Shown piece by piece: positions 8,304 through 63,517 of a stretch of 64,000 nt of DNA; within the stretch, counting starts at the first letter, position 1; each line of letters opens with the position of its first letter. Location: positions 1,922,001 to 1,986,000 of the forward strand of contig CATNEN010000014.1 in the NCBI GenBank assembly GCA_950097015.1, read 5' to 3'. The position numbers and the translations under genes are program-made. The stretch is from Macrostomum hystrix (lineage: Eukaryota > Animalia > Platyhelminthes). The notes beneath the pieces were generated by a model. The model ran no database searches. It worked only from the letters and a program-made list of their open reading frames with translations, and was not told where the DNA came from.

Positions 8304-9992
8304 ATGCCCGCCAGCAACTGCACCGACGTGGACGTCGCCGCGATGCTGCGCGCGCCCGGCTCCATCTTGCTGGCAATCTTCCTGTGCCTCATCAACCTGT
8401 CCGTGCTGGCGGGCAACACGTTGGTCATCGCTGCCGTCCTCACCTACGAGAAGTTCAAGAAGAAGGGAGTGACAAATGTGCTCATCACCAGCCTGGCCCT
8501 CAGCGACCTGCTGCTCGCCACGGCCGTCCTGCCGTTCTCCATCGCGAACCAGGTGAGCAGCAAGCACTGGTTCATGGGCACGGCGCTCTGCCAGTTCTGG
8601 CTGGTCGTTGACGTCCTCTGCTGCACCGCCAGCATCCTCAACCTAGTGGTGATCGCCTTCGACCGCTTCTTCGCCATCAAGTACCCCATGCGCTACCCCA
8701 AGCTAATGACCACAAAGCACGCCCGGATCCTGGTGGCAGCCGTCTGGATCCTCGCCTTCACCATCAGCTTCCCACCGCTGCTGCAGTTCATGCCAGCGGG
8801 GGGCGGCCAGGCCGCGGACGGGCGGCGGGCGGAGGAGGACCGGCCGGCCAGCGCCAGCAACTGCACGGCCGGCAAGTTCATGATGTGCACCATCGCGGAG
8901 TCATCAACGGCTTACATCATCTACTCGGCCAGCGGCTCGTTCTTCCTGCCCTCTCTGGTGATGCTCTACTTCTACCTGGAGATCTACCGGACTGTCCGGC
9001 GAACGATTCGCAATATTCGGCGCGGCGAGATGCTGCTGAAGTCCACGCGAAAGGCTTCAACGGCTAGCGTGGCCGGCGGGAACGAAGTCTGCGGCCTGCG
9101 GGTGCACTGCGGCGGCGGCAGCGGCGGTGGCGGTGGCCAGCGGCAGCGAGCGATGTCTACCAGCGGCCTCTCAGTGGCTGTGGCAGCTGCAGCCGTGGCC
9201 GCTGCCGCGGCGGCCTCAACAACCGCTTCGAGACGGACTGGCTCGATAACCCGGCGAGCGTCGGCGGCCGGCGGAACGGGCAAGCAGCAGCAGCAGCATC
9301 CGACGGACCAGCAGAAGTCCTCAAACAATTGGTTGTCGCCGAATTATGTACCCGGGGGTGGCGGCGCCTCGTCGTCAGCCGGCGCCACCTCGCACGGGGC
9401 TTCGCCGGCCTCTGAAGTGCGCCGTCCGTCCCACAGCATTTTGCCCGGCCTGCGGAAGCGCGCCTCCTCCAACCAGCAGCTGAAGAACATCTACAACGAG
9501 ACGAAGGCCGCCCGCATGCTGGCCATCATCGGCATCGCCTTCACCGTCTGCTGGCTGCCGTTCTTCTCCGTCTACCTCGCCGGCGCCTTCTGCGACGCGT
9601 GCGTGCCGGGCCTGGCCTTCGATGTGTTCTTCTGGATGGGCTACTGCAACAGCGCGCTGAACCCCTGCATCTACGCCCTGCTCTCGCGCGACTTCCGCTG
9701 CGCCTTCCGCCACCTGCTGTGCCGCGGCCGACGGCGGCAGAACAACGCAAGCGGCGGAGGCGGTGGAAGCTGCGGGCAGTATTATCGCAGGTGCGCCGGC
9801 GGAGGCGGCTCGGCATCGCCGGGCACAGCTGGGACCTCGTCTGCCACCCCGGCGTCTGTCCCTCCGGCGGCTCCGAATGCCCCAGCTGCCACCGCCGTCA
9901 AGATCTTCATCAGCAGCGCATCCGACCACGGCTGCGGCGCCGGCGGCTTGCTGGGCGAGTCGGCAGCCAATAGCGGCTACGACTGCTACTGA
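8304..9992 (+). CDS. Class A biogenic-amine GPCR, most like alpha-adrenergic-type octopamine receptor (OAMB-like), intronless, 562 aa
   Basis: Seven hydrophobic segments; GN..VI in TM1, LALSDLL in TM2, amine-binding Asp in DVLCCTASILNL, DRF, TM5 YSASGSFFLP, ETKAARML..CWLPFF, WMGYCNSALNPCIY. Long Gly/Ala/Gln-rich third intracellular loop. The subtype call is from motif recall only. Confidence 0.9.
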   Translation: MPASNCTDVDVAAMLRAPGSILLAIFLCLINLSVLAGNTLVIAAVLTYEKFKKKGVTNVLITSLALSDLLLATAVLPFSIANQVSSKHWFMGTALCQFWLVVDVLCCTASILNLVVIAFDRFFAIKYPMRYPKLMTTKHARILVAAVWILAFTISFPPLLQFMPAGGGQAADGRRAEEDRPASASNCTAGKFMMCTIAESSTAYIIYSASGSFFLPSLVMLYFYLEIYRTVRRTIRNIRRGEMLLKSTRKASTASVAGGNEVCGLRVHCGGGSGGGGGQRQRAMSTSGLSVAVAAAAVAAAAAASTTASRRTGSITRRASAAGGTGKQQQQHPTDQQKSSNNWLSPNYVPGGGGASSSAGATSHGASPASEVRRPSHSILPGLRKRASSNQQLKNIYNETKAARMLAIIGIAFTVCWLPFFSVYLAGAFCDACVPGLAFDVFFWMGYCNSALNPCIYALLSRDFRCAFRHLLCRGRRRQNNASGGGGGSCGQYYRRCAGGGGSASPGTAGTSSATPASVPPAAPNAPAATAVKIFISSASDHGCGAGGLLGESAANSGYDCY

Positions 9993-52004: not shown

Positions 52005-53422
52005 TTGCTGTAGATGTAAGCTGTAGATAGAAGCTGTAGACGGAAGCTGTAGATGGAAGCTGTAGATGGAAGCTGTAAATGGAAGCTGTAGATAGAAGCT
52101 GTAGATGGAAGCTGTAGATGGAAGCTGTAAATGGAAGCTGTAGATGTAAGCTGTAGATAGAAGCTGTAGATAGAAGCTGTAGATGGAAGCTGTAGATAGA
52201 AGCTGTAGATGGAAGCTGTAGATGGAAGCTGTAGATGGAAGCTGTAAATGGAAGCTGTAGATGTAAGCTGTAGATAGAAGCTGTAGATGGAAGCTGTAGA
52301 TGGAAGCTGTAAATGGAAGCTGTAGATGTAAGCTGTAGATAGAAGCTGTAGATAGAAGCTGTAGATGGAAGCTGTAGATAGAAGCTGTAGATGGAAGCTG
52401 TAGATGGAAGCTGTAGATGGAAGCTGTAGATGGAAGCTGTAGATGGAAGCTGTAGATAGAAGCTGTAAATGGAAGCTGTAGATGTAAGCTGTAGATAGAA
52501 GCTGTAGATAGAAGCTGTAGATGGAAGCTGTAGATAGAAGCTGTAGATGGAAGCTGTAGATGGAAGCTGTAGATGGAAGCTGTAAATGGAAGCTGTAGAT
52601 GTAAGCTGTAGATAGAAGCTGTAGATGGAAGCTGTAGATGGAAGCTGTAAATGGAAGCTGTAGATGTAAGCTGTAGATAGAAGCTGTAGATAGAAGCTGT
52701 AGATGTAAGCTGTAGATAGAAGCTGTAGATGGAAGCTGTAGATGGAAGCTGTAGATGGAAGCTGTAAATGGAAGCTGTAGATGTAAGCTGTAGATAGAAG
52801 CTGTAGATAGAAGCTGTAGACGGAAGCTGTAGATGGAAGCTGTAGATGGAAGCTGTAAATGGAAGCTGTAGATAGAAGCTGTAGATGGAAGCTGTAGATG
52901 GAAGCTGTAAATGGAAGCTGTAGATGTAAGCTGTAGATAGAAGCTGTAGATAGAAGCTGTAGATGGAAGCTGTAGATAGAAGCTGTAGATGGAAGCTGTA
53001 GATGGAAGCTGTAGATGGAAGCTGTAAATGGAAGCTGTAGATGTAAGCTGTAGATAGAAGCTGTAGATAGAAGCTGTAGACGGAAGCTGTAGATGGAAGC
53101 TGTAGATGGAAGCTGTAAATGGAAGCTGTAGATAGAAGCTGTAGATGGAAGCTGTAGATGGAAGCTGTAAATGGAAGCTGTAGATGTAAGCTGTAGATAG
53201 AAGCTGTAGATAGAAGCTGTAGATGGAAGCTGTAGATAGAAGCTGTAGATGGAAGCTGTAGATGGAAGCTGTAGATGGAAGCTGTAAATGGAAGCTGTAG
53301 ATGTAAGCTGTAGATAGAAGCTGTAGATAGAAGCTGTAGACGGAAGCTGTAGATGGAAGCTGTAGATGGAAGCTGTAAATGGAAGCTGTAGATAGAAGCT
53401 GTAGATGGAAGCTGTAGATGGA
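52005..53422. repeat. 13-bp minisatellite (GAAGCTGTAGATG), ~108 copies
   Basis: Directly visible. Confidence 0.97.
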
Positions 53423-53699
53423 ATTCGAGGAAGATCCATGAAACTATAGGCATTGGAATTATCACGAAAACGAAACGTCACCGGCGCATTAATACTTTTT
53501 TTCTACATATTCGCTTTTATATCTATAAATGTAGCGCCAATCAGCAGCATTTAGTGTCGTTAAAATAGTCCCATAAGCTGATTCGTTGAAAAAGATGTAT
53601 ACGCACGCAAGCAGGCTATATTATGTAAATGACATGATGCAAGGATCGACAGGTATATTGTAGAGCGCTGAAGAATCTGCATCTACAAATTAAAGCTCT

Positions 53700-53915
53700 C
53701 TTAAAAATACAGCTCGTAAAAATACAGCCCTCTTAAAAGTACAGCTCCCTTAAAAGTACAGCTCTCTTAAAAGTACAGCTCTCTTAAAAGTTCAGCTCTC
53801 TTAAAAGTTCAGCTCTCTTAAAAGTACAGCTCTCTTAAAAGTACAGCTCTCCTAAAAGTACAGCTCTCTTAAAAGTACAGCTCTCCTAAAAGTACAGCTC
53901 TCTTAAAAGTACAAG
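53700..53915. repeat. 17-bp tandem repeat (TTAAAAGTACAGCTCTC)
   Basis: Directly visible. Confidence 0.9.
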
Positions 53916-54072
53916 TCTCTAATCTCATTTAATGGTCAGTAAAAAAGTTTACGATTGTTTACATACGTATTATCTCAATCTCTTTGAAAACAACAGCGTT
54001 AATGTAATGTTGCTGTTAGGAGTTATAATGCTGAGCATGCTGATAATTGGGATCGTGATGTCGGCTATTGTG

Positions 54073-57000
54073 TCATCGGCTTGACAGTTCAGCCGCCTAC
54101 AAAGAAAGGATGAACAAGGAAATAATGATTAATATCAATATAATGATTAGATAGGAGGCAACAATGCGTAAAATTTCTCTGACTATAGCTGTGTCCTTTA
54201 CAGAATCCAGCCAGGTTGTCATGGCATTGTTAAGCGATCCTGTTATGTTGTTCTGTTCCCTTACAACATCCGTTGTGCTTACCTTCTGAGACAGAAGGTT
54301 GTCCGACTCGGCATTCAAATAGGCGGCAGATCGTAGTCTCGGGGACAGCCTAGAGAACTGGTCCGAACTCACGCAGCTGAGCGCGCACAGTAGCAGCTCC
54401 TGTCCGTCAACGTCCTCCCGCTTCAAGAGGTCTTCGACCCACTTTCCAGCAATTATTTCGGGATTCGAACTCAGCAGAACGCGCACGCACTGCAGCACGG
54501 CCTCGAAGTTGACATAGAAGCAGTCGTAAGCCACTTGCTGCAGGTTCACGACACAGCAGCTCGACAGCGGCTTGGGCAGAAACTGCAGAATCGGACTTTC
54601 TTTGAACTCGAAGCAGAATTTCCAAGCTGAATCGCGAGACTTCAGGTGCTTCCAAACATTCGCAGCCGTGGCATCGGTTATTGAGCTCCCGGAAGGCCAG
54701 TCAATACCCCTGCTCACTTGGAACCACTCGCAACTCGTGACAATCTTCAAGGCCGAGTCCGGATTTCCGATCTTCAGACAAGCCAGAGCCTTAAGAGCTT
54801 CTCGCGCTGAACGGGCGTACACAGGTAGCCTGGCAATAAGCCGCATGAGCGCATCCTGACATTCGGCACTGCAGTCCTCATGAGAAATCAGGCGAATGCT
54901 TTCCCGAACAACATCATAGACCTCATGGTACTCGAGACTACCTTTGCTTGACACAATTTTGTGGTCGAGAATCGGCAGGATGAGAAACGGATGGAAGAAG
55001 AATCGGCCTGACTCACTAATGGGCTGCAGGTATTTCTTGAAATCCTCCAGATGCTTGTGTAGATTGTCCACCACGTCGTTTAGTACGCATACAATGTGTG
55101 GCAACTCACTTCGTTCGGCCCCCTTCAGGTACAGAGCAGCTCTACAAAGGAAGAAGTGCTCCATTATCCCACCGTTAGAGTCTCCCTGGCTTTGTTGTCG
55201 GGTGCTGCTTCTCTCCAAATCGTTTATCAGCATTCTCAGTGCACGTCTCGCAAGGCTCACAAGGTTTTCCGACTGCCAGTCACCCGGCGGTGTCTCTTCT
55301 AACATGCGAAAAGTTATCGTTTTAGCGTGATAGGCCTTCATGCCGCTCACTCTGGGGCAGATCACCTTCTTTATTAGATACTTCAAGGTGACAAACAGCT
55401 GACCCTGCACAGTTGTGAGGCTCCGCAAGAGCGTCCTCTCCAGGAATGTGGTGCTCAAGCGAAGCTCTTCGCCTTGCCTTCCGGCAGAGGCGGCGTGTAC
55501 GGCGTGGCAGGGCGAGGTTTTCAGTTCATTGTTTAGCGAGGCCAAGACCGATGGCCGCATGCGCGACCTTGAAACTCGATCTGGCAGCAGTGGCGCGATC
55601 GAGGGGTAACAACAGAGGCGACATGCGAGTACGTGATCGACAGCGGGTCTCAGAGTTGTTCCGTTCGCTGTTTGAGCCGGATTAGACGCTGAAAGTTCAA
55701 TAGTGGCAGGTCTCGTTGCATTCTGCAATTAGCCTTGTGTGGCATTTGAATCATGGGTTTTACGCTCGTATAACCCGATTTGATTTAATTTACTTTGTAG
55801 CTTCTACGCACGATCAAACACTTACCGAAGCCTTTTACCAGAATGTGACCATTTTTGTAATCAACAGCGTCGGTAATTTTAACTTCGCTGCACTGGCAGT
55901 ACTTCTTGAGGTGGTAGAGCCGGCCAAGGATCAGCTGCATCACATCAATATCAGACTCAAGGTCCGTCCTGCCGTTGAGGGTCATTAGATTGTTGCCCCA
56001 GCCTTCTGAGTAGCTGCCAACAACGAAAATGATGTCGTGATCACCAATTCGCTTTCTCAGAATCTGCTGCAGAACGTCTCCTAGGGCACTCTGCAGCGCC
56101 GCTCTTGATTCGACGAAGCCTGCTTGGCAGAGCCTTCGATGCAGCTGCTCGCTGAGCTTCTGATCAGTTGTGTTTTTTGCCAAAATTCTGAAAGCAGCGG
56201 CAGCGCGAGCGGCGAACGTGATTTAATTTCCATTCAACATACCTACAACATACCTAAAATTCTTGCTGCGGTTTATGAATAAAATAGCTCCTTTTATACT
56301 CACTGAGAATCTCCAATTCTTGCTGTTGGTGCTGGGACAGGCGGCTTTCTATCGGCTTCCTTCAGAAAACTCACGATTCTGGCATGACGATTGCGCGATG
56401 CAAGATCAAGCGCTGACTCGCCAGTAATCGTTCGTATATCGATGTCGGCGCATGACTTGACAAGCAAGTCGACCACGCGGTAATGGCCATTGTTCGATGC
56501 AATGTGGAGAGACGTCTCACCTGTTTTCTTTCGAACATTAACATCTGCTTGCGCCTTAATTAGCAGATCCACTGTGTCATAATGGCCGTTCTGCGCCGCC
56601 ATGAAGAGCGGCGAGGTGCCGGTGCTGGTCCTCAGAAGATGAACATCTGCTTGCGATTTTATTAATGACTTAACAATGCCCGCGCGACCAAGTTGGGACG
56701 CAAAGTACATCGGTGTCGAGCCAGTGTCGTTCCGCAGATCAACGTCAGCTTGCGCCTTGACGAGTGCTTCTACGATTTGCATATGACCCATTTGTGACGC
56801 CGCATGCAGAGGCCCTGTTCCCGTTACCACCTGGAGGTTGATGTCAGCTTGGGCTTTGATAAGTAAGTTCACGATTCGTTCATGACCACCTGTTGATGCC
56901 ATGTAAAGAGGCGACGAGCCGGTGGTCCTTTGAAGATTGACATTTGTACCAGCTCTGATCAGCAGCTTGGCGACTCTTTCGTGCCCGAACTGTGATGCTA

Positions 57001-57751
57001 AATGGAGTGCAGATGAGCCGCCGTTCTCTTGAAGATCAACATCGGCTTGCGAATCAATCAGCGATTTCACAATACAAACATGCCCCTGCTGGGCAGCGAT
57101 GTGCAGCGGTACAACACCGGATCTTTGCCGCAGATTGACCTCAGCTTGGGCGCAGATGAGCAGGTCCGCAACGCCTACGTGACCGTTTTGCGATGCCATG
57201 TACAGGGGCGTCTCGCCACTGTCGCTCTGGATATTGATGTTGGCTCGTGCCTCGATGAGCGCACTGACGATGCGGTCGTGGTTATTCTGTGCCGCTATGT
57301 AGATTGGGGATTCTCCTTTCTTAGTCCGAATGTTCAAGTCAGCTTTCGCCTTTATAAGCAGCTCAACAATGCGGTCAAGTCCTTTCTCCGACGCAACATA
57401 AAGTGGCGACGCTCCCCGCTGTCTCTCCTGAATATCGACATTGGCCTGGGCTTTGATTAGAATGTCAAGCAGACTGTCATGCCCATTTCTTGACGCAATG
57501 AAGACAGGCGAGCAGCCGTCAGCTTGCTGAACGTTGACGTCAACTTGGCTCAGGACAAACCTGCGCACTGCTGCGGCGTCCCCGATTTCGCAGGCCAAAT
57601 GCAGAGGCGTCGTTCGGCCGCCTGGGACTGGAATGTGCCGGCCACCGTCCAGCTCTCTGCTCAGCAGGCAGCAAAGCTCATGCCGATTTCTGTTTAGCAT
57701 CGCATTCGCATATTCAGCATCCGCCTCTGAGCGCCCTTGCGATGACTGCAT
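54073..57751 (-). CDS. Ankyrin-repeat / cGAS-like (Mab-21, cGLR) nucleotidyltransferase fusion protein; exons 56304-57751, 55826-56187, 54283-55688, 54073-54096 (1079 aa), or 1133 aa ending at 54097 if the last intron is retained
   Basis: Three supplied ORFs join in frame via CA|GTGAGT...TTTCAG|A (56188-56303) and G|GTAAGT...TTTCAG|CG (55689-55825). 13 ankyrin repeats, then VVGSYSEGW..SDIDVM and VDHV, then Mab-21-type C-lobe (LKYLIK..MKAYHAKTITFRMLE..W..ENL..MEHFF). Confidence 0.82.
54900..56030 (-). other. Pol-beta-superfamily NTase core plus Mab-21 C-terminal lobe (spans one intron)
   Basis: GS, 20 residues, D-I-D, 54 residues, V-D after splicing; fits the cGLR active-site spacing. Confidence 0.8.
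56340..57620 (-). other. Ankyrin repeat array, 13 repeats (G.TPL..A...GH...V..L consensus)
   Basis: Counted in the 483-aa ORF 56300-57751. Confidence 0.95.
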
Positions 57752-59591
57752 CAGCGTGAGTCACGAAAGCGCTAATTAGTTGTTGCAAAATCGCTACGGC
57801 AACCGGTACAGGAAGTTATTACACGCGTGACGTCGTACAGTCAGGGCTCTGAATGTAATGGTTTAAATATACTATTGTAGAAGCATTTTACATACTCATT
57901 CCATTGATGACCAATTGCAAATGGCTTCTGACGCTAGGCTAGTAAATTTCTATAGGTTATGCATTGCTTGTTTCGAATCAACGATTTGCAAACTAGTCAA
58001 ATAAAGTTTGGCTGTGCTCATCAAATCGAAATTATAATATAGTGCTGATTTCTCAATAAATGCAACGATGGACCCAGTTTTGCGAGTGCATTTTGCATAT
58101 ATTAAAATACATTCTTTTCATCCTACTAATTTATATCAGGATTCTCTGGCCAGACCGAGCAAGAGATTATTAGAAGGTTTGACAAGAACCAGCAAGTGAA
58201 TTAAGTGTGTAATCTACAAAGTACAGCTTTATTTTGTGTCTTTTTCATAAATATGAGCTCATGTGGAAATGGGTGCACATGTGATGGTGTATCTTTAGTG
58301 GAGATGTTTTTGAATAAGTTAGAAATTTCATCGAAATACCAACCATTCCTTTTATTATATGACTAAAGACTTGCCTTGTAGTAGGGTAGCAGCATATACC
58401 AAAAATTCCAAATAAAAAACTTGCGTTTTTAATAGATGTAGTAGCTATTGAAACTGAAACAAACTAGCTATGAAACTTTTATTCTAGAAAGCCAGTAAAG
58501 TTTGTCTACAAAATATATAAAATCTCATAATAAAAATTTTCCTACTATTATAAGATAATATTACACAAAATAAACAGGATCCTGTAATAAATCCAACGAG
58601 CACAAAAGTAACTATTGCATTGGTATGTGTCAGTATACTTGTCATATTTTAATACCCTATTTAATTTCGACACACCACAATGGAAATAATGTATAATTAA
58701 CGAATGTGCTATAAATTTAAGCTTGATTATAATTAGTCATTATTGTCCAATCAATAATTTAATTTGTCAATGAGGCACAAAGTTTAAAAGTAGCAAGAAC
58801 AACAAAGCGAAAACGTAACCTTTTAAAATAAAGAATACGAAGAATATATTGTATTGTAAGAGATACATTTGTTTCGTTCTGTACGCTTAAAATGCTACAA
58901 TCTGAGCTTCAGAACAATCTACTCCAATTTTTTTGTTTGAACTAATGAAATTCCGAACATGTTATCCAGTCCGTACCAAAAAAGAACAGCTTTTGCAAAA
59001 GTACACTGTAGCTACATGACTGTAAGTACGCCGCAGCACACGATTTACGCTGGTTATTGGCTCATTATTAACATGCTCGATAAAGTATGTGTCACGACAA
59101 AGATCGCTGTAGTAAAACTACTAATACTGTGATTCCTGTCACCATCGACGACTACGATGCATGTCTACATACTGAAGCATTGTGTTGATATAGTTTATTA
59201 CATATTTAGCAGGGCGTCCGATTTGACTCATTTGCAGGTAGGATCAGCACAGATAATAGTGCAGATAGGGAGAGTACGAGGGATGGATCGTCTGAGAAAG
59301 CTGACAGGGACGGGGTCACGCGGCCGAAGTCCGCGGACAGGGTCCCCAAAGGCAGGGACGGCCAGGAGTCCCGAAGGCAGTGATGGGGTCGCCGAAGTCC
59401 GGGACGATCGAGAGCTCAGCTCCCATCGTTAGTTCTACGAACTGACGGAGACAGGCAGTGGAGTAAACATATAAATTTATTATTTTTTGCAAGAGATTCG
59501 TTGATAAACACACTCTACTAGATCTGCTGCTAATTCCGTGTGTCTGTGTGTGGATATGAATTGCATGTTTGTATGATTTGCCGATTGATAC

Positions 59592-59985: not shown

Positions 59986-62900
59986 TTACGGTACAAAGCG
60001 ATCCGGGGCACGTCGGATTCTTGAGCTTTGACGTGGAGAGGTCGCGGTCTTAGGCTCCGGAATTCCGTCGTTATGACACGCTGCATGCTCAGCGGTTGCT
60101 GCTGGTATCTCCGTCGGGGTGGAGGGCTGTTGAAAGGTGGCTTCTTCCGAATCTTCCTCTCCCTCGTCATCGTCGTGCGGAAGATATGACGGAGCCAGCT
60201 GAGTGGTGCTAGCCAGGCGCAGGCCCTCGTTGGCTACGATCCAGGCGGTGTTGTTTCCTGACGTCATAACATACGTGGCAGGATCTCCCCGAGTTGAAGG
60301 TTGCGGCTGATAGATGACCTCGTCACCTTGCTCGAACTGAGAGACAACCGGTACACGGAGACGTCTGCCAAGGACCAACTCTGCTGGGCATTTACCACGG
60401 CTGAGCGACGAATTGCGGTGATGCAAAAGAACCTTTTGAAGAAAGAACGGGAATTCCACGTGTGTTATTCGCTCGGACCAGGCTCGAAGAGCGGATTTGA
60501 CAGTCTGAACAGCTCGTTCAGCTGCACCATTAGCTTGCGGGCAGTAAGCCGGAGACTCCTTTTTCCTCGCGCCGTGGGCACGAAGCCACGAGTTCAAGTG
60601 ATCCCCAACGAACTCCGGAGCATTGTCCGTGACAACGAGCTCCGCTACGCCAAAACGGTAAAAGACGGTGCGTAGGCATTGAATAACAGACGTGGCCATC
60701 CTGTTCCGACAAGGGAATGCTTCTATCCACCCGGAATAGGCGTCTAGTATTATCAGTATGTCTCCAGCTTCCTTCACGTGCGCCCAGTCCATGTGAATGC
60801 GCTGGAACGGATATTCTGGGGAAGGCCAGCAGTCCCTATCGCGTCCTAAGCGTGGTCGCAGGCGACAACATTCCAGGCAACGGCTGACAAACTGAGCGAC
60901 GTCTTGTTGCATTCCTGGCCACCAGCAAGAGGCGGCTAGCAAATTGTACGAGGCATGCATCCCCGAGTGGGTGTCGTGGATGGCGTCGAAGGCGGCCCTG
61001 CGTAGTCGAGGCGGGATGTATACCCGCCTGTGCATATACAGAAGACCAGTTTCCAGCGTCAGTTTGTCGGCAACCTTCTTGAAGCCCAATTCGGCTTGAG
61101 AGCAATCATGCCAGTTGCCAGTGCGTACTCGCTTGATGATTTTCTGGGTGAACGGATCTACGTCAATCTCTGCTAAAATTCTGCCTGCTTCAATTACGGG
61201 CGCCTCAAATGCGACCGAGTTGATTGCGTTGAACATTTCTGGGCTATCAGTGGTGACGTTGTCAAACCGCAGGCGCGAGAGAGCATCGGCATGTGGAATG
61301 CTGCTACCTCGAACTTATTTGATCTCGAAATCAAACTGCTTTCCCTTGTCGAAATTGTAGAAGCATTCCCTTGTCGGAACAGGATGGCCACGTCTGTTAT
61401 TCAATGCCTACGCACCGTCTTTTCCGGCGAAGTTCGGGACGAGCCTCCCAAAGAAATTTACTAGTCCAAGAAAGCTGGCTAGTTCCGATTTGTTCGAAGG
61501 GACGGACACTTGCTTGACTTTCTCGACCAATCGTTCGTCGGGCTGAATTCCAGCGGCTGAGATTTTAAACCCTAGAAAGGATATGGAATCGCTGTAGCTG
61601 ACGCATTTCGACTCGTTGACTGTGACTCGCTTTTCGGCAAGGCGCGTTCGCACCGCGGACAGTCGCTTTTCCAGGGCAGCGGCATCTGGGGCATGAACCA
61701 GGATGTCATCCTGATAGATTAATAATCCCTTGATTTCGGCTAGGATGGCCTCCATGGTTCTCTGGAAGATGAACAAAGCGTTCTTCATCCCCATTTGCAA
61801 TCTGTTGACCCGATATAAACCGCGAGACGTGTTGATGATGGACAGGTCTCGTGCTGCTTCGTCCAGTTCAATCTGCCAATAGGCAGCGCGAAGGTCCACC
61901 GTAGCGAAGACCTTGGCGTTCTTCAAGCGAGAGAATATGACTTCTACATTCGGGATTGGGTGTGAGTCGGATTTGATTTTTTCAAATAAAAAATACGCTG
62001 TAGTCGGCGCACATGCGCAACGTCCCATCCTTTTTCTTTACCCATATGACGGGTGATGCGTTGCTCACGGGCCCCTCGATTGGTTCAATTATTCCTAGCT
62101 GTTGCAAGCGGTCCAGCTCCGCATTGACTTGCTCCTCTACGGCAATGGGTACTGCACGAGCCCGGCAGAACTTCGGCTTGGCACCTTCGACGAGTTCCAT
62201 GCGTGCCTTTATCCCTCTTATTGCAGGCAAGGGTTGTTGGCCACTGCGACTATGGCTTGAAGATGCAGGCGAGGCGTGAAACAGGCCATCGGAATCTAGT
62301 AAGTCGCGGCCAAGCAAGCCGTATGGCTTGTTCGAGGCGACTACGATCAGTTCTGCCGGATGCAGGCGACCGCGCGGCTCTACGGCAGCTGAGAGCTTCC
62401 CCAGCGAATGCATCACATGGCCGTCGAATGCTTCGAGTCGACGAGAGCACTTCTGGAGCTGCAGCCGGCCAAGTGACGTCCATTGGGAGCTTGAGAGCAC
62501 CGAGATGGAGGCTCCGGTGTCGATTTGCATGTTTACTGGCTTGCCGTCAATGGCTATGGGCTCGGTGACAACGCCGATAGCATGCACATAGTCCGCATCG
62601 CAGATGTGCATCAGGGGATCTGTGGCCCTTTCGTTGGGACTTGCGTCAGGATCCATTGAATTGGCGGCATAATGCACCAGACGAGAGGATGACGAGCGGC
62701 ATACATTGGCAAAATGGTTCTTCTTGCCGCACTTGGAGCAGTCTTTACCAAAGGCAGGGCACCGGCCATCAGAATGCGACTTCCCGCAGTAGCGGCAGTC
62801 ACTGACACGCCGAGTGCTGGCGTGTTTTGAATTCTGAGGTTGTTCGGGGTGCCGCGAGTGAGAAAAGTGCACTGTGGACTCGCAGTCCGGATTTGGTGAT

Positions 62901-63517
62901 AAGCTCGCTGATGAGAGCTGAGGGGGAGAGGCGCTTTCGGCGATCGGGCGAGCTTGATTAGTTGTCGAGACAAAGGATGACATCTGTTCCTGAGTACGAA
63001 TAAAGTCAGAAATTTCCAAGACTGTCATAGGCTTGATCTGCATAGCTTCGAGCACGCGTTGCTGTACGCGAGAGTCACAGAGGCCAGAGACTAAGGCCAT
63101 ATTTATTAACTCGTCAGAAGGACTACTAGCTGTCTTTAAGTCGTCAAACCTTCAGTCCTTCGCAGCCTGACGTAGGCGACTCACGAAGTCGGTAATGGAC
63201 TCTTTTGGTGCTTGTCGAACTGAGAAGAAGCGAACACGTTCGGCAATAGTACGTTTTTCTTTGGGTCGCAAATAATTTAGCAATTCCTCTTGAATTTCTG
63301 TGAATGCCAGATAAGTAAAGGCTCGCGGCGAGATTAGATTCTGTAACTTTTCCACAGCACTGAGGCCGCAACAGGCCAGGAAGTTGTCAGCAATGTATTT
63401 CCTGTCGCTCTTGTCTTCCCATCCTTTGGCGCGAGCTAACGCCTCGAAAGCGATGAGCCAAGTCTGCGCGCGAGCCGCATGTTCCAGAGGCAGTTCGCCA
63501 AGGCTACGCGACGCCAT
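59986..63517 (-). pseudogene. gag-pol, disrupted: gag with CCHC knuckles, protease DTGAS, RT YQDD, integrase HHCC/DDE
   Basis: In-frame TGA at 63152-63154, frameshift near 61990, RNase H core absent, TAA at 61317-61319; integrase 59986-61236 is open. Confidence 0.9.

What the first reader, a model, noticed from the sequence alone, without database searches (positions are those of the whole stretch)
54073..57751. Spliced ankyrin-array + cGAS-like (cGLR/Mab-21) enzyme with intact catalytic motif
Seen: three ORFs that look separate join into one reading frame through two short consensus introns (116 nt, phase 2; 137 nt, phase 1). The product has 13 ankyrin repeats, an NTase core (VVGSYSEG, 20 aa, D-I-D, 54 aa, V-D), a Mab-21 C-lobe and ~250 aa of probably helical sequence. 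Established: cGLRs are animal cGAS-like receptors that make cyclic dinucleotides for STING, with active-site pattern hxGS-X8-20-[DE]h[DE]h-X50-90-h[DE]h. Inference: this is an active second-messenger synthase whose ligand-sensing or gating module is a protein-binding ankyrin array rather than a nucleic-acid surface, i.e. a candidate protein-triggered innate immune receptor. I cannot tell from here how often this architecture has already been described.
Basis: partly seen in the sequence, partly recalled or inferred. Interest (0 to 1): 0.85.

Follow-up and report, generated by a model that had tools for sequence, protein, structure and literature searches.

The report
Flatworm ankyrin-fused cGAS-like enzyme gene
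This is a real, expressed flatworm (Macrostomum) gene that joins 13 ankyrin repeats to a cGAS-like signalling enzyme with an intact active site, but the ankyrin-cGAS-like design and this flatworm family were already catalogued in 2023, so it is a new member of a known kind whose trigger, product and receptor are still unknown.

Summary
Assembled RNA contigs from four public runs (100% identical to the window) carry the M. lignano-type spliced leader and join exon 1 (13 ankyrin repeats) to the enzyme exons through the two predicted GT-AG introns (116 and 137 nt). They also show a third intron of 186 nt that removes a false membrane-like tail. The product is 1079 aa.

The enzyme part has the motif hxGS-X20-DIDV-X54-VDH. 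It keeps 35 of 36 family-conserved residues. It is 70% identical to an M. lignano protein whose AlphaFold model (pLDDT 90.8) matches human cGAS, MB21D2 and oyster Cv-cGLR1 at Z 19-20.

The last 250 aa form a confident helical domain that is TPR-like in shape only and is found by sequence only in Macrostomum.

The architecture is not new. Li et al. 2023 list ANK-cGLR fusions, including M. lignano entries, and cloned five M. lignano constructs; none is among their 15 named active enzymes. This scan has also noted at least four other ANK-cGLR loci in the same genome.

Enzyme activity, protein-triggering and a STING partner are untested. The enzyme core is basic (pI 9.06), so nucleic-acid sensing is not excluded.

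Verdict: real gene, new member of a known kind, moderate-to-low interest.

The parts
57752..57849 (-). 5' UTR. It begins at a spliced-leader trans-splice acceptor (cattacattcAG|) at about 57850/57849.
   Evidence: All four runs' contigs end at 57849 with loose letters whose reverse complement is TGCGAAGACTCAATTTATTGCAT. This is the exact 3' end of the published M. lignano spliced leader (PMC5173321).
56304..57751 (-). Exon 1 coding part: ATG at 57751 and residues 1-482 (plus 2 nt of codon 483). It holds 13 ankyrin repeats (residues 43-473, window 56333-57625), then a Pro-rich linker.
   Evidence: Pfam Ank E 5e-89 with 12 stretches. 13 repeats of 33 aa in register. RNA contigs cover it at 100% identity.
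56188..56303 (-). Intron 1: 116 nt, GT-AG, phase 2. It lies in the linker between the ANK array and the NTase.
   Evidence: Sequence. Spliced out in RNA contigs of X1 and X4; the X2 and X3 contigs show the same junction, reported as a loose end or shifted joint.
55826..56187 (-). Exon 2: residues 483-604. It holds the N-terminal spine helices and the first half of the NTase core, with G540-S541 (56018-56013) and D562/D564 (55952-55950 and 55946-55944).
   Evidence: Translation. Motif positions. These residues are conserved in 43-47 of 48 family members.
55689..55825 (-). Intron 2: 137 nt, GT-AG, phase 1. It lies inside the NTase core.
   Evidence: Sequence. Spliced out in all four runs.
55030..55688 (-). 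Exon 3, first part: residues 604-823. It holds the third catalytic Asp D621 (55638-55636) and the Mab-21 C-lobe.
   Evidence: D138 of the family alignment is conserved in 40 of 48 members. The A1 profile hits cGLR1 (8gjy) and cGAS in PDB at E 1e-6. The fold match to cGAS covers model residues 12-336.
54283..55029 (-). Exon 3, second part: residues 824-1072. This is the family-specific C-terminal helical domain, TPR-like in shape, with a small beta element.
   Evidence: AF2 model of the window's own piece has pLDDT 89.7. No significant PDB Foldseek hit. TPR-like matches are only Z<=9 and TM<=0.55. Sequence relatives are found only in Macrostomum.
54097..54282 (-). Intron 3: 186 nt, GT-AG, phase 0. 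It removes the hydrophobic 'tail' of the long ORF.
   Evidence: Spliced out in all four runs. Frame checked.
53900..54096 (-). Exon 4: the last 7 codons (AAELSSR), stop TGA at 54075-54073, and the 3' UTR. The UTR runs on to about 53856 and overlaps a 17-mer tandem array.
   Evidence: RNA contigs. Translation. Tandem repeat at 53694-53913.

Best explanation
Shown: this is an expressed, spliced-leader-capped, four-exon gene of a Macrostomum flatworm. It encodes a 1079-aa protein with 13 ankyrin repeats, a Pro-rich linker, a cGAS/Mab-21-fold nucleotidyltransferase with the complete cGLR catalytic pattern, and a family-specific TPR-like helical tail. It belongs to a large Macrostomum-specific expansion of ANK-cGLR genes. 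Inferred: it works like other cGAS-like receptors, as a latent enzyme that on activation condenses two NTPs into a cyclic (di)nucleotide signal using G540/S541, D562, D564 and D621. Also inferred: the flanking repeat domains (the ANK array and perhaps the helical tail) act as the regulatory or recognition module that gates the enzyme by binding a protein or other non-nucleic-acid ligand, or hold it autoinhibited or localised. Product, ligand and receptor are unknown.
For: Gene structure and expression: the RNA contigs show all three introns removed, single contigs span ANK to NTase, and the spliced leader sits at the 5' end. Family: the protein aligns end to end (about 1030-1050 aa, 46-48% identity) with ~1100-aa M. 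lignano ANK-Mab-21 proteins. Its NTase-plus-tail part is 70% identical to the 604-aa protein P0001. Active site: hxGS-X20-DIDV-X54-VDH. GS, D, D, D are conserved in 40-47 of 48 family members, and the window protein keeps 35 of 36 near-invariant residues. Fold: the AF2 model of P0001 has pLDDT 90.8 and pTM 0.92. Foldseek puts cGAS and Cv-cGLR1 on top at E 1e-7. The Swiss-Prot AFDB top hits are all cGLRs or cGAS. VIA-align gives Z 20.3 to human cGAS, 20.1 to MB21D2 and 19.0 to Cv-cGLR1 over 267-290 residues. The family profile finds cGLR1 and cGAS in PDB sequences at E 1e-6. Paralogs P0043 and P0053 pass Pfam's Mab-21_C threshold. Regulatory role of the repeats: the domain boundary coincides with intron 1 and a Pro-rich linker, and ANK number varies widely among paralogs (proteins of 833-3379 aa). 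The M. lignano cores that Li et al. cloned (the two sequences seen start just upstream of the NTase core) and tested with pooled nucleic acids are not among their named active enzymes.
Against: There is no biochemical evidence for any member of this Macrostomum family, and the absence from Li et al.'s active list may simply reflect poor expression. The NTase core is basic (pI 9.06), as in nucleic-acid-sensing cGLRs, so the ANK array need not be the sensor. Variation among the 13 repeats is highest at hairpin positions 1-3 and 5 and at position 14, but also at outer-helix positions 17, 18 and 21, so it does not single out a binding surface. The fold model is of a 70%-identical relative, not of the window protein itself. 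STING is reported lost in other flatworms (Schistosoma, PMC4117786; Schmidtea, PMC13563047), and its presence in Macrostomum could not be checked here.
Confidence: 0.6

Rival explanations
1. It is a nucleic-acid-sensing cGLR. The basic back face of the NTase core binds dsRNA or dsDNA as in cGAS, Dm-cGLR1 and Cv-cGLR1. The ankyrin array and helical tail serve only for localisation, oligomerisation or recruiting downstream partners.
For: The NTase core has pI 9.06, while the C-terminal domain has pI 6.0 and the ANK region pI 7.7. Li et al. report pI >8.5 for dsDNA- and dsRNA-sensing cGLRs. The closest solved folds are DNA- and RNA-activated enzymes.
Against: Five M. lignano cores tested with a pool of nucleic-acid PAMPs are not among the named active enzymes. 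pI is a crude proxy. The cGAS Zn-thumb was not identified.
Confidence: 0.22
2. It is a Mab-21-fold protein that does not make a cyclic-nucleotide immune signal. It could be a scaffold or regulator like MAB21L1/2 or MiD49/51, or an NTase with other chemistry such as linear oligonucleotides or protein nucleotidylation.
For: Fold searches cannot separate cGLRs from other Mab-21 proteins: MB21D2 scores Z 20.1, and MAB21L1/2 appear at lower rank. No product is known for any family member. Flatworms studied so far lack STING.
Against: MAB21L1/2/3 lack a predicted functional active site (Li et al.). Here the full GS/D/D/D set is kept in 40-47 of 48 paralogs, which argues for selection on catalysis. 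The family profile hits cGLR1 and cGAS rather than MAB21L in PDB sequences.
Confidence: 0.15
3. It is a chance juxtaposition, a pseudogene, or two neighbouring genes wrongly joined.
For: The ORFs are separated by stops in the genome. A retroelement and tandem repeats flank the locus.
Against: Four runs give spliced contigs joining all exons in frame with no internal stop. Full-length homologues with the same order of domains exist in M. lignano.
Confidence: 0.02

Closest known systems
ANK-cGLR fusions catalogued by Li et al. 2023 (bioRxiv 10.1101/2023.02.22.529553). These include M. lignano PAA45980.1, PAA86972.1, PAA67649.1, PAA58690.1, PAA68676.1 and PAA68216.1, and the Stylophora pistillata ANK-cGLR.
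   Same: N-terminal ankyrin array followed by a Mab-21/cGAS NTase with an intact active-site pattern. The Macrostomum family is the same one: PAA45980.1 is P0182, in the cluster of P0053, which is about 31% identical to the window's NTase part.
   Different: The window gene is a separate paralogue or orthologue. Its best match is 70% identical, and that match is annotated without ANK. It is only about 31% identical to the P0053/PAA45980.1 cluster that holds one of the tested constructs. Its splice structure, spliced leader and helical tail are documented here. None of the catalogued Macrostomum members has a known product or ligand.
Human and mouse cGAS; Cv-cGLR1 (PDB 8gjw); the cGLR1 entry 8gjy (species not given in the output)
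   Same: Bilobed NTase fold (Z 19-20, rmsd 3.4-3.8 over about 270 residues), GS loop and acidic triad.
   Different: Only 14-19% identity. No N-terminal ANK or C-terminal helical domain in those enzymes. No cGAS-type Zn-thumb was identified. Ligand and product are unknown here.
Cv-cGLR2 (Crassostrea virginica, 632 aa) and Sp-cGLR2 (Stylophora pistillata, 688 aa): cGLRs with long C-terminal extensions and an unknown ligand
   Same: The predicted structure of Cv-cGLR2 aligns to the model over residues 11-580, that is core plus tail (TM 0.53/0.51). Bivalve Mab-21 proteins give weak matches to the tail alone (TM about 0.5, E 0.05-0.25).
   Different: There is no sequence-profile similarity between the window's tail and a bivalve cGLR TPR tail (hhalign probability 0.2%). 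Those proteins have no ANK array.
Human MB21D2 (PDB 7lt1), an orphan cGLR
   Same: Equally good fold match (Z 20.1 over 290 residues). It is also an orphan with no known ligand.
   Different: MB21D2 is a single-domain protein without repeat arrays.

Membership tests
cGLR (cGAS-like receptor) family as defined by Li et al. 2023 | cGAS/Mab-21-type bilobed nucleotidyltransferase fold | tested here: met
   The AF2 model of the 70%-identical relative P0001 has pLDDT 90.8. It scores Z 19-20 to cGAS, MB21D2 and Cv-cGLR1. Foldseek top hits are cGAS and cGLRs. The family profile gives E 1e-6 to cGLR1 and cGAS sequences. The window protein itself was not folded across the exon 2/3 junction, because no reference exists for a spliced product.
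cGLR (cGAS-like receptor) family as defined by Li et al. 2023 | Active-site pattern hxGS-X8-20-[DE]h[DE]h-X50-90-h[DE]h | tested here: met
   VVGS-X20-DIDV-X54-VDH at residues 538-622. X20 is at the upper limit. The last 'h' is His here and is variable in the family.
cGLR (cGAS-like receptor) family as defined by Li et al. 2023 | [quoted passage not shown] | not testable with these tools
   This needs recombinant protein and TLC or LC-MS. The M. lignano relatives cloned by Li et al. are not among their 15 named active enzymes.
cGLR (cGAS-like receptor) family as defined by Li et al. 2023 | Ligand-dependent activation (pattern recognition) | not testable with these tools
   There are only indirect hints: core pI 9.06, and repeat variability that does not discriminate.
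cGLR-STING pathway | A STING (TMEM173) receptor encoded in the same genome | not tested
   No STING sequence was available by reference, so none could be used as a query. The scan's notes on this genome mention none. STING is reported absent from Schistosoma and Schmidtea. M. lignano is not in Li et al.'s Table S5 as held.
Ankyrin-repeat proteins | Tandem 33-residue ANK repeats | tested here: met
   Pfam Ank E 5e-89 and Ank_2 E 3e-80. 13 repeats in register.
TPR proteins (for the C-terminal domain) | Recognisable TPR sequence repeats, or a clear structural match to a TPR solenoid | tested here: inconclusive
   No Pfam TPR hit. The best shape matches are TPR, PPR or PlcR-like, but at Z<=9 and TM<=0.55, within the noise range for helical repeats. 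hhalign against a bivalve cGLR TPR tail is negative.
MAB21L1/2/3 (developmental Mab-21 proteins) | Mab-21 fold without a functional catalytic triad | tested here: not met
   The triad and GS loop are intact and conserved across the family.

The most novel reading that the evidence does not exclude
Macrostomum may be the one flatworm lineage that kept and massively expanded cGLRs, while parasitic flatworms and planarians lost both cGAS and STING. These receptors may be built as repeat-flanked enzymes (ANK array, cGLR core, TPR-like tail) that sense proteins rather than nucleic acids. If Macrostomum also lacks STING, they would signal through a so-far unknown cyclic-nucleotide receptor.
Probability: 0.2. 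Interest if true: 0.7.

Novelty: new member of a known kind. Interest (0 to 1): 0.3.

Why it matters
cGLRs are a recently recognised family of animal innate immune sensors, and most have no known ligand. Repeat-fused cGLRs are the obvious candidates for sensing something other than nucleic acid. Macrostomum is a transgenic, RNAi-amenable flatworm in which an expanded ANK-cGLR family could be tested in vivo. This locus adds a fully verified gene model: spliced leader, three introns, a 1079-aa product and an intact active site. A model of this quality is what is needed to clone the full-length protein, whereas the Li et al. constructs seen here start just upstream of the enzyme core. As a discovery it adds little. 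The architecture and the Macrostomum family are already in the literature, and this scan has already noted the same family at several other loci in this genome.

Tried and rejected
- Pfam on the separate exons gave only a sub-threshold Mab-21_C hit and nothing for exon 2. Single-sequence phmmer against PDB gave nothing relevant. Family profiles and folds were needed instead.
- The hydrophobic C-terminal tail of the long ORF looked like a membrane anchor. This was rejected because it is intron 3.
- The C-terminal domain was searched with Foldseek against PDB, VIA-wide, AFDB clusters, the ESM Atlas by shape and the Atlas by features, and with hhalign against a bivalve TPR tail. All gave only weak TPR-like shape matches and no family assignment.
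- Entropy across the 13 ANK repeats did not single out the canonical binding surface.
- I tried to calibrate species distance with a neighbouring ORF. It is an aminergic GPCR whose best M. lignano hit is a 46% partial match, so it is uninformative. The species within Macrostomum is therefore undetermined.
Literature and scan notes gave no answer for Macrostomum.
- The spliced product could not be handed to the fold tool by reference. A 70%-identical database protein served as proxy for the NTase, and the window's own exon 3 piece was used for the tail.
Full report
**1. Observation**

On the minus strand between 57751 and 54073 there are three long ORFs: 56300-57751 (483 aa), 55785-56183 (132 aa) and 54097-55728 (543 aa). 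The sequence shows a GTGAGT donor right after 56304 with a TTTCAG acceptor before 56187. It shows a GTAAGT donor after 55826 with a TTTCAG acceptor before 55688. Removing these 116- and 137-nt introns (phases 2 and 1) joins the ORFs in frame.

Public RNA assemblies settle the gene structure. Four runs of one study hold contigs 100% identical to the window, and these contigs lack exactly those two introns. They also lack a third intron, 54282-54097 (186 nt, GT-AG, phase 0). Two single contigs (3578 and 3457 nt) run from the 5' end through all four exons. The hydrophobic 'tail' of the third ORF is therefore intronic. The product is 1079 aa with no internal stop.

All contigs end at 57849 followed by 15-23 letters that are not in the genome. 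Their reverse complement, TGCGAAGACTCAATTTATTGCAT, is the exact 3' end of the published Macrostomum lignano spliced leader (PMC5173321). The mRNA is therefore trans-spliced, and the organism is a Macrostomum flatworm, either M. lignano or a congener. No spliced leader or transcript end was seen at exon 2, so there is no sign of a separate NTase mRNA.

**2. Domains**

- *Ankyrin array.* Exon 1 encodes 13 ankyrin repeats (residues 43-473; Pfam Ank E 5e-89). A Pro-rich linker follows, and intron 1 falls within it.
- *Pfam alone is weak.* It gives only a sub-threshold Mab-21_C hit (E 0.022) and nothing for exon 2.
- *Homologues.* Homology searches find a large family that, at close range, is exclusively M. 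lignano: 52 cluster representatives below E 1e-30. Several ~1100-aa members align with the window protein end to end at 46-48% identity over about 1030-1050 residues. A 604-aa member (P0001) is 70% identical over the whole NTase-plus-tail part. Some paralogues pass Pfam's Mab-21_C threshold. More distant hits are bivalve proteins with bona fide Mab-21 plus Mab-21_C domains.
- *Conservation.* In a 48-member alignment, the GS loop is conserved in 47 and 46 members, and the three acidic residues in 44, 43 and 40. The window protein keeps 35 of 36 near-invariant family residues.

**3. Fold of the enzyme core**

The spliced product has no reference, so I folded P0001 with the family alignment (pLDDT 90.8, pTM 0.92).

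| Search | Result |
|---|---|
| Foldseek vs PDB | Top hits mouse and human cGAS and oyster Cv-cGLR1, E about 1e-7 |
| AlphaFold Swiss-Prot | Top 14 are all cGLRs or cGAS |
| VIA-align | Z 20.3 human cGAS, 20.1 MB21D2, 19.0 Cv-cGLR1; 267-290 residues, model residues ~10-340 |
| Family profile vs PDB sequences | cGLR1 (8gjy) E 1.2e-6, cGAS E 2e-6 |

The cGAS/Mab-21 fold plus an intact active-site pattern meets the two sequence- and structure-based criteria for a cGLR. Product synthesis and ligand dependence cannot be tested here.

**4. The C-terminal 250 aa**

The window's own piece (residues 825-1072) folds confidently (pLDDT 89.7). It is a helical-hairpin domain with a small beta element.

- Foldseek finds nothing significant in PDB (best E 0.24).
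- VIA-wide and the ESM Atlas shape search give TPR, PPR or PlcR-like solenoids at Z<=9 and TM<=0.55, which is within noise for helical repeats.
- AFDB clusters return Macrostomum paralogues, plus weak matches (TM about 0.5) to the tails of bivalve Mab-21 proteins.
- Cv-cGLR2 aligns to core plus tail at TM 0.53.
- A profile comparison with a bivalve cGLR TPR tail is negative.

I call this domain TPR-like in shape only, and family-specific in sequence.

**5. What is already known**

Li et al. 2023 (bioRxiv 10.1101/2023.02.22.529553) list ANK-cGLR as one of the recurrent cGLR architectures, and they describe S. pistillata ANK-cGLRs. Their Table S2 lists several M. lignano accessions with Ank_2 domains. 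Their Table S3 shows five M. lignano proteins (numbers 89-93) cloned for the 140-protein screen. The two construct sequences shown (numbers 89 and 90) begin just upstream of the NTase core. One of the five, PAA45980.1, is in my family set as P0182.

The column that names active enzymes is empty for the two entries shown in full (numbers 89 and 90). No M. lignano enzyme is named anywhere in the main text. So no member of this family has a known product.

The same paper states that most platyhelminths have no cGLR other than Mab21-like proteins. Other papers report loss of both cGAS and STING in Schistosoma (PMC4117786) and Schmidtea (PMC13563047). Whether Macrostomum has STING I could not determine.

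This scan has already noted at least four other ANK-cGLR loci in this genome. One of them was followed up, with the same conclusion.

**6. Mechanism**

Shown: the gene structure, its expression, the domain order, the fold by proxy, and a conserved catalytic set.

Inferred: it is a latent cyclic-nucleotide synthase gated by its repeat domains. Four observations favour a regulatory or recognition role for the repeats:
- Intron 1 and the Pro-rich linker mark a clean domain boundary.
- The number of ANK repeats varies widely among paralogues.
- The family is a lineage-specific expansion.
- The cloned M. lignano cores were not notably active with nucleic-acid PAMPs.

- The core is basic (pI 9.06), in the range Li et al. 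link to nucleic-acid sensing.
- Repeat-to-repeat variability is high at the hairpin and inner-helix positions, but also on the outer helix.
- There is no biochemistry for any family member.

I put about 0.6 on 'active cGLR gated by its repeat modules', 0.22 on 'nucleic-acid-sensing cGLR with ANK as scaffold', 0.15 on 'not a cyclic-nucleotide immune enzyme' and 0.02 on 'artefact'.

**7. Verdict**

The novelty class is a new member of a known kind. Interest is moderate-to-low (0.3). The most novel reading still open is a protein-sensing, possibly STING-independent cGLR system retained only in this flatworm lineage. I give it about 0.2 probability.

Noticed in passing
window 59986-63100 (-): Three ORFs encode aspartyl protease, reverse transcriptase and integrase of a Ty3/gypsy-like LTR retroelement. 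They lie about 2.1 kb upstream of the ANK-cGLR 5' end. I only described them.
   Followed up: partly
window 52007-53423 and 53694-53913: A 13-mer tandem array (109 copies) produces spurious ~500-aa ORFs on the minus strand. A 17-mer array (13 copies) overlaps the 3' UTR of the ANK-cGLR transcript.
   Followed up: partly
window 8304-9992 (+): A single-exon 562-aa ORF is an aminergic (octopamine-receptor-like) class A GPCR. Its best M. lignano hit is only 46% identical over 41% of the query.
   Followed up: partly
window protein residues C582, C629, H665 (with C580, C626, C630, C664 nearby); exons 2-3: Cys and His residues are conserved in at least 90% of family members inside the NTase core. 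This could be a structural metal site, at a different place from the cGAS Zn-thumb.
   Followed up: no
window 57849-57850 (-): This is a trans-splice acceptor. The mRNA carries the M. lignano-type spliced leader, whose terminal ATG is out of frame with the main ORF (ATG AGC CCT ... TAA), so translation should start at 57751.
   Followed up: yes
same genome, about 156 kb before the window start and on other pieces: The scan's notes list at least four further ANK-cGLR loci. They include one with about 26 ANK repeats and one said to be disrupted by a SINE. The family is multi-copy and partly clustered in this genome.
   Followed up: no
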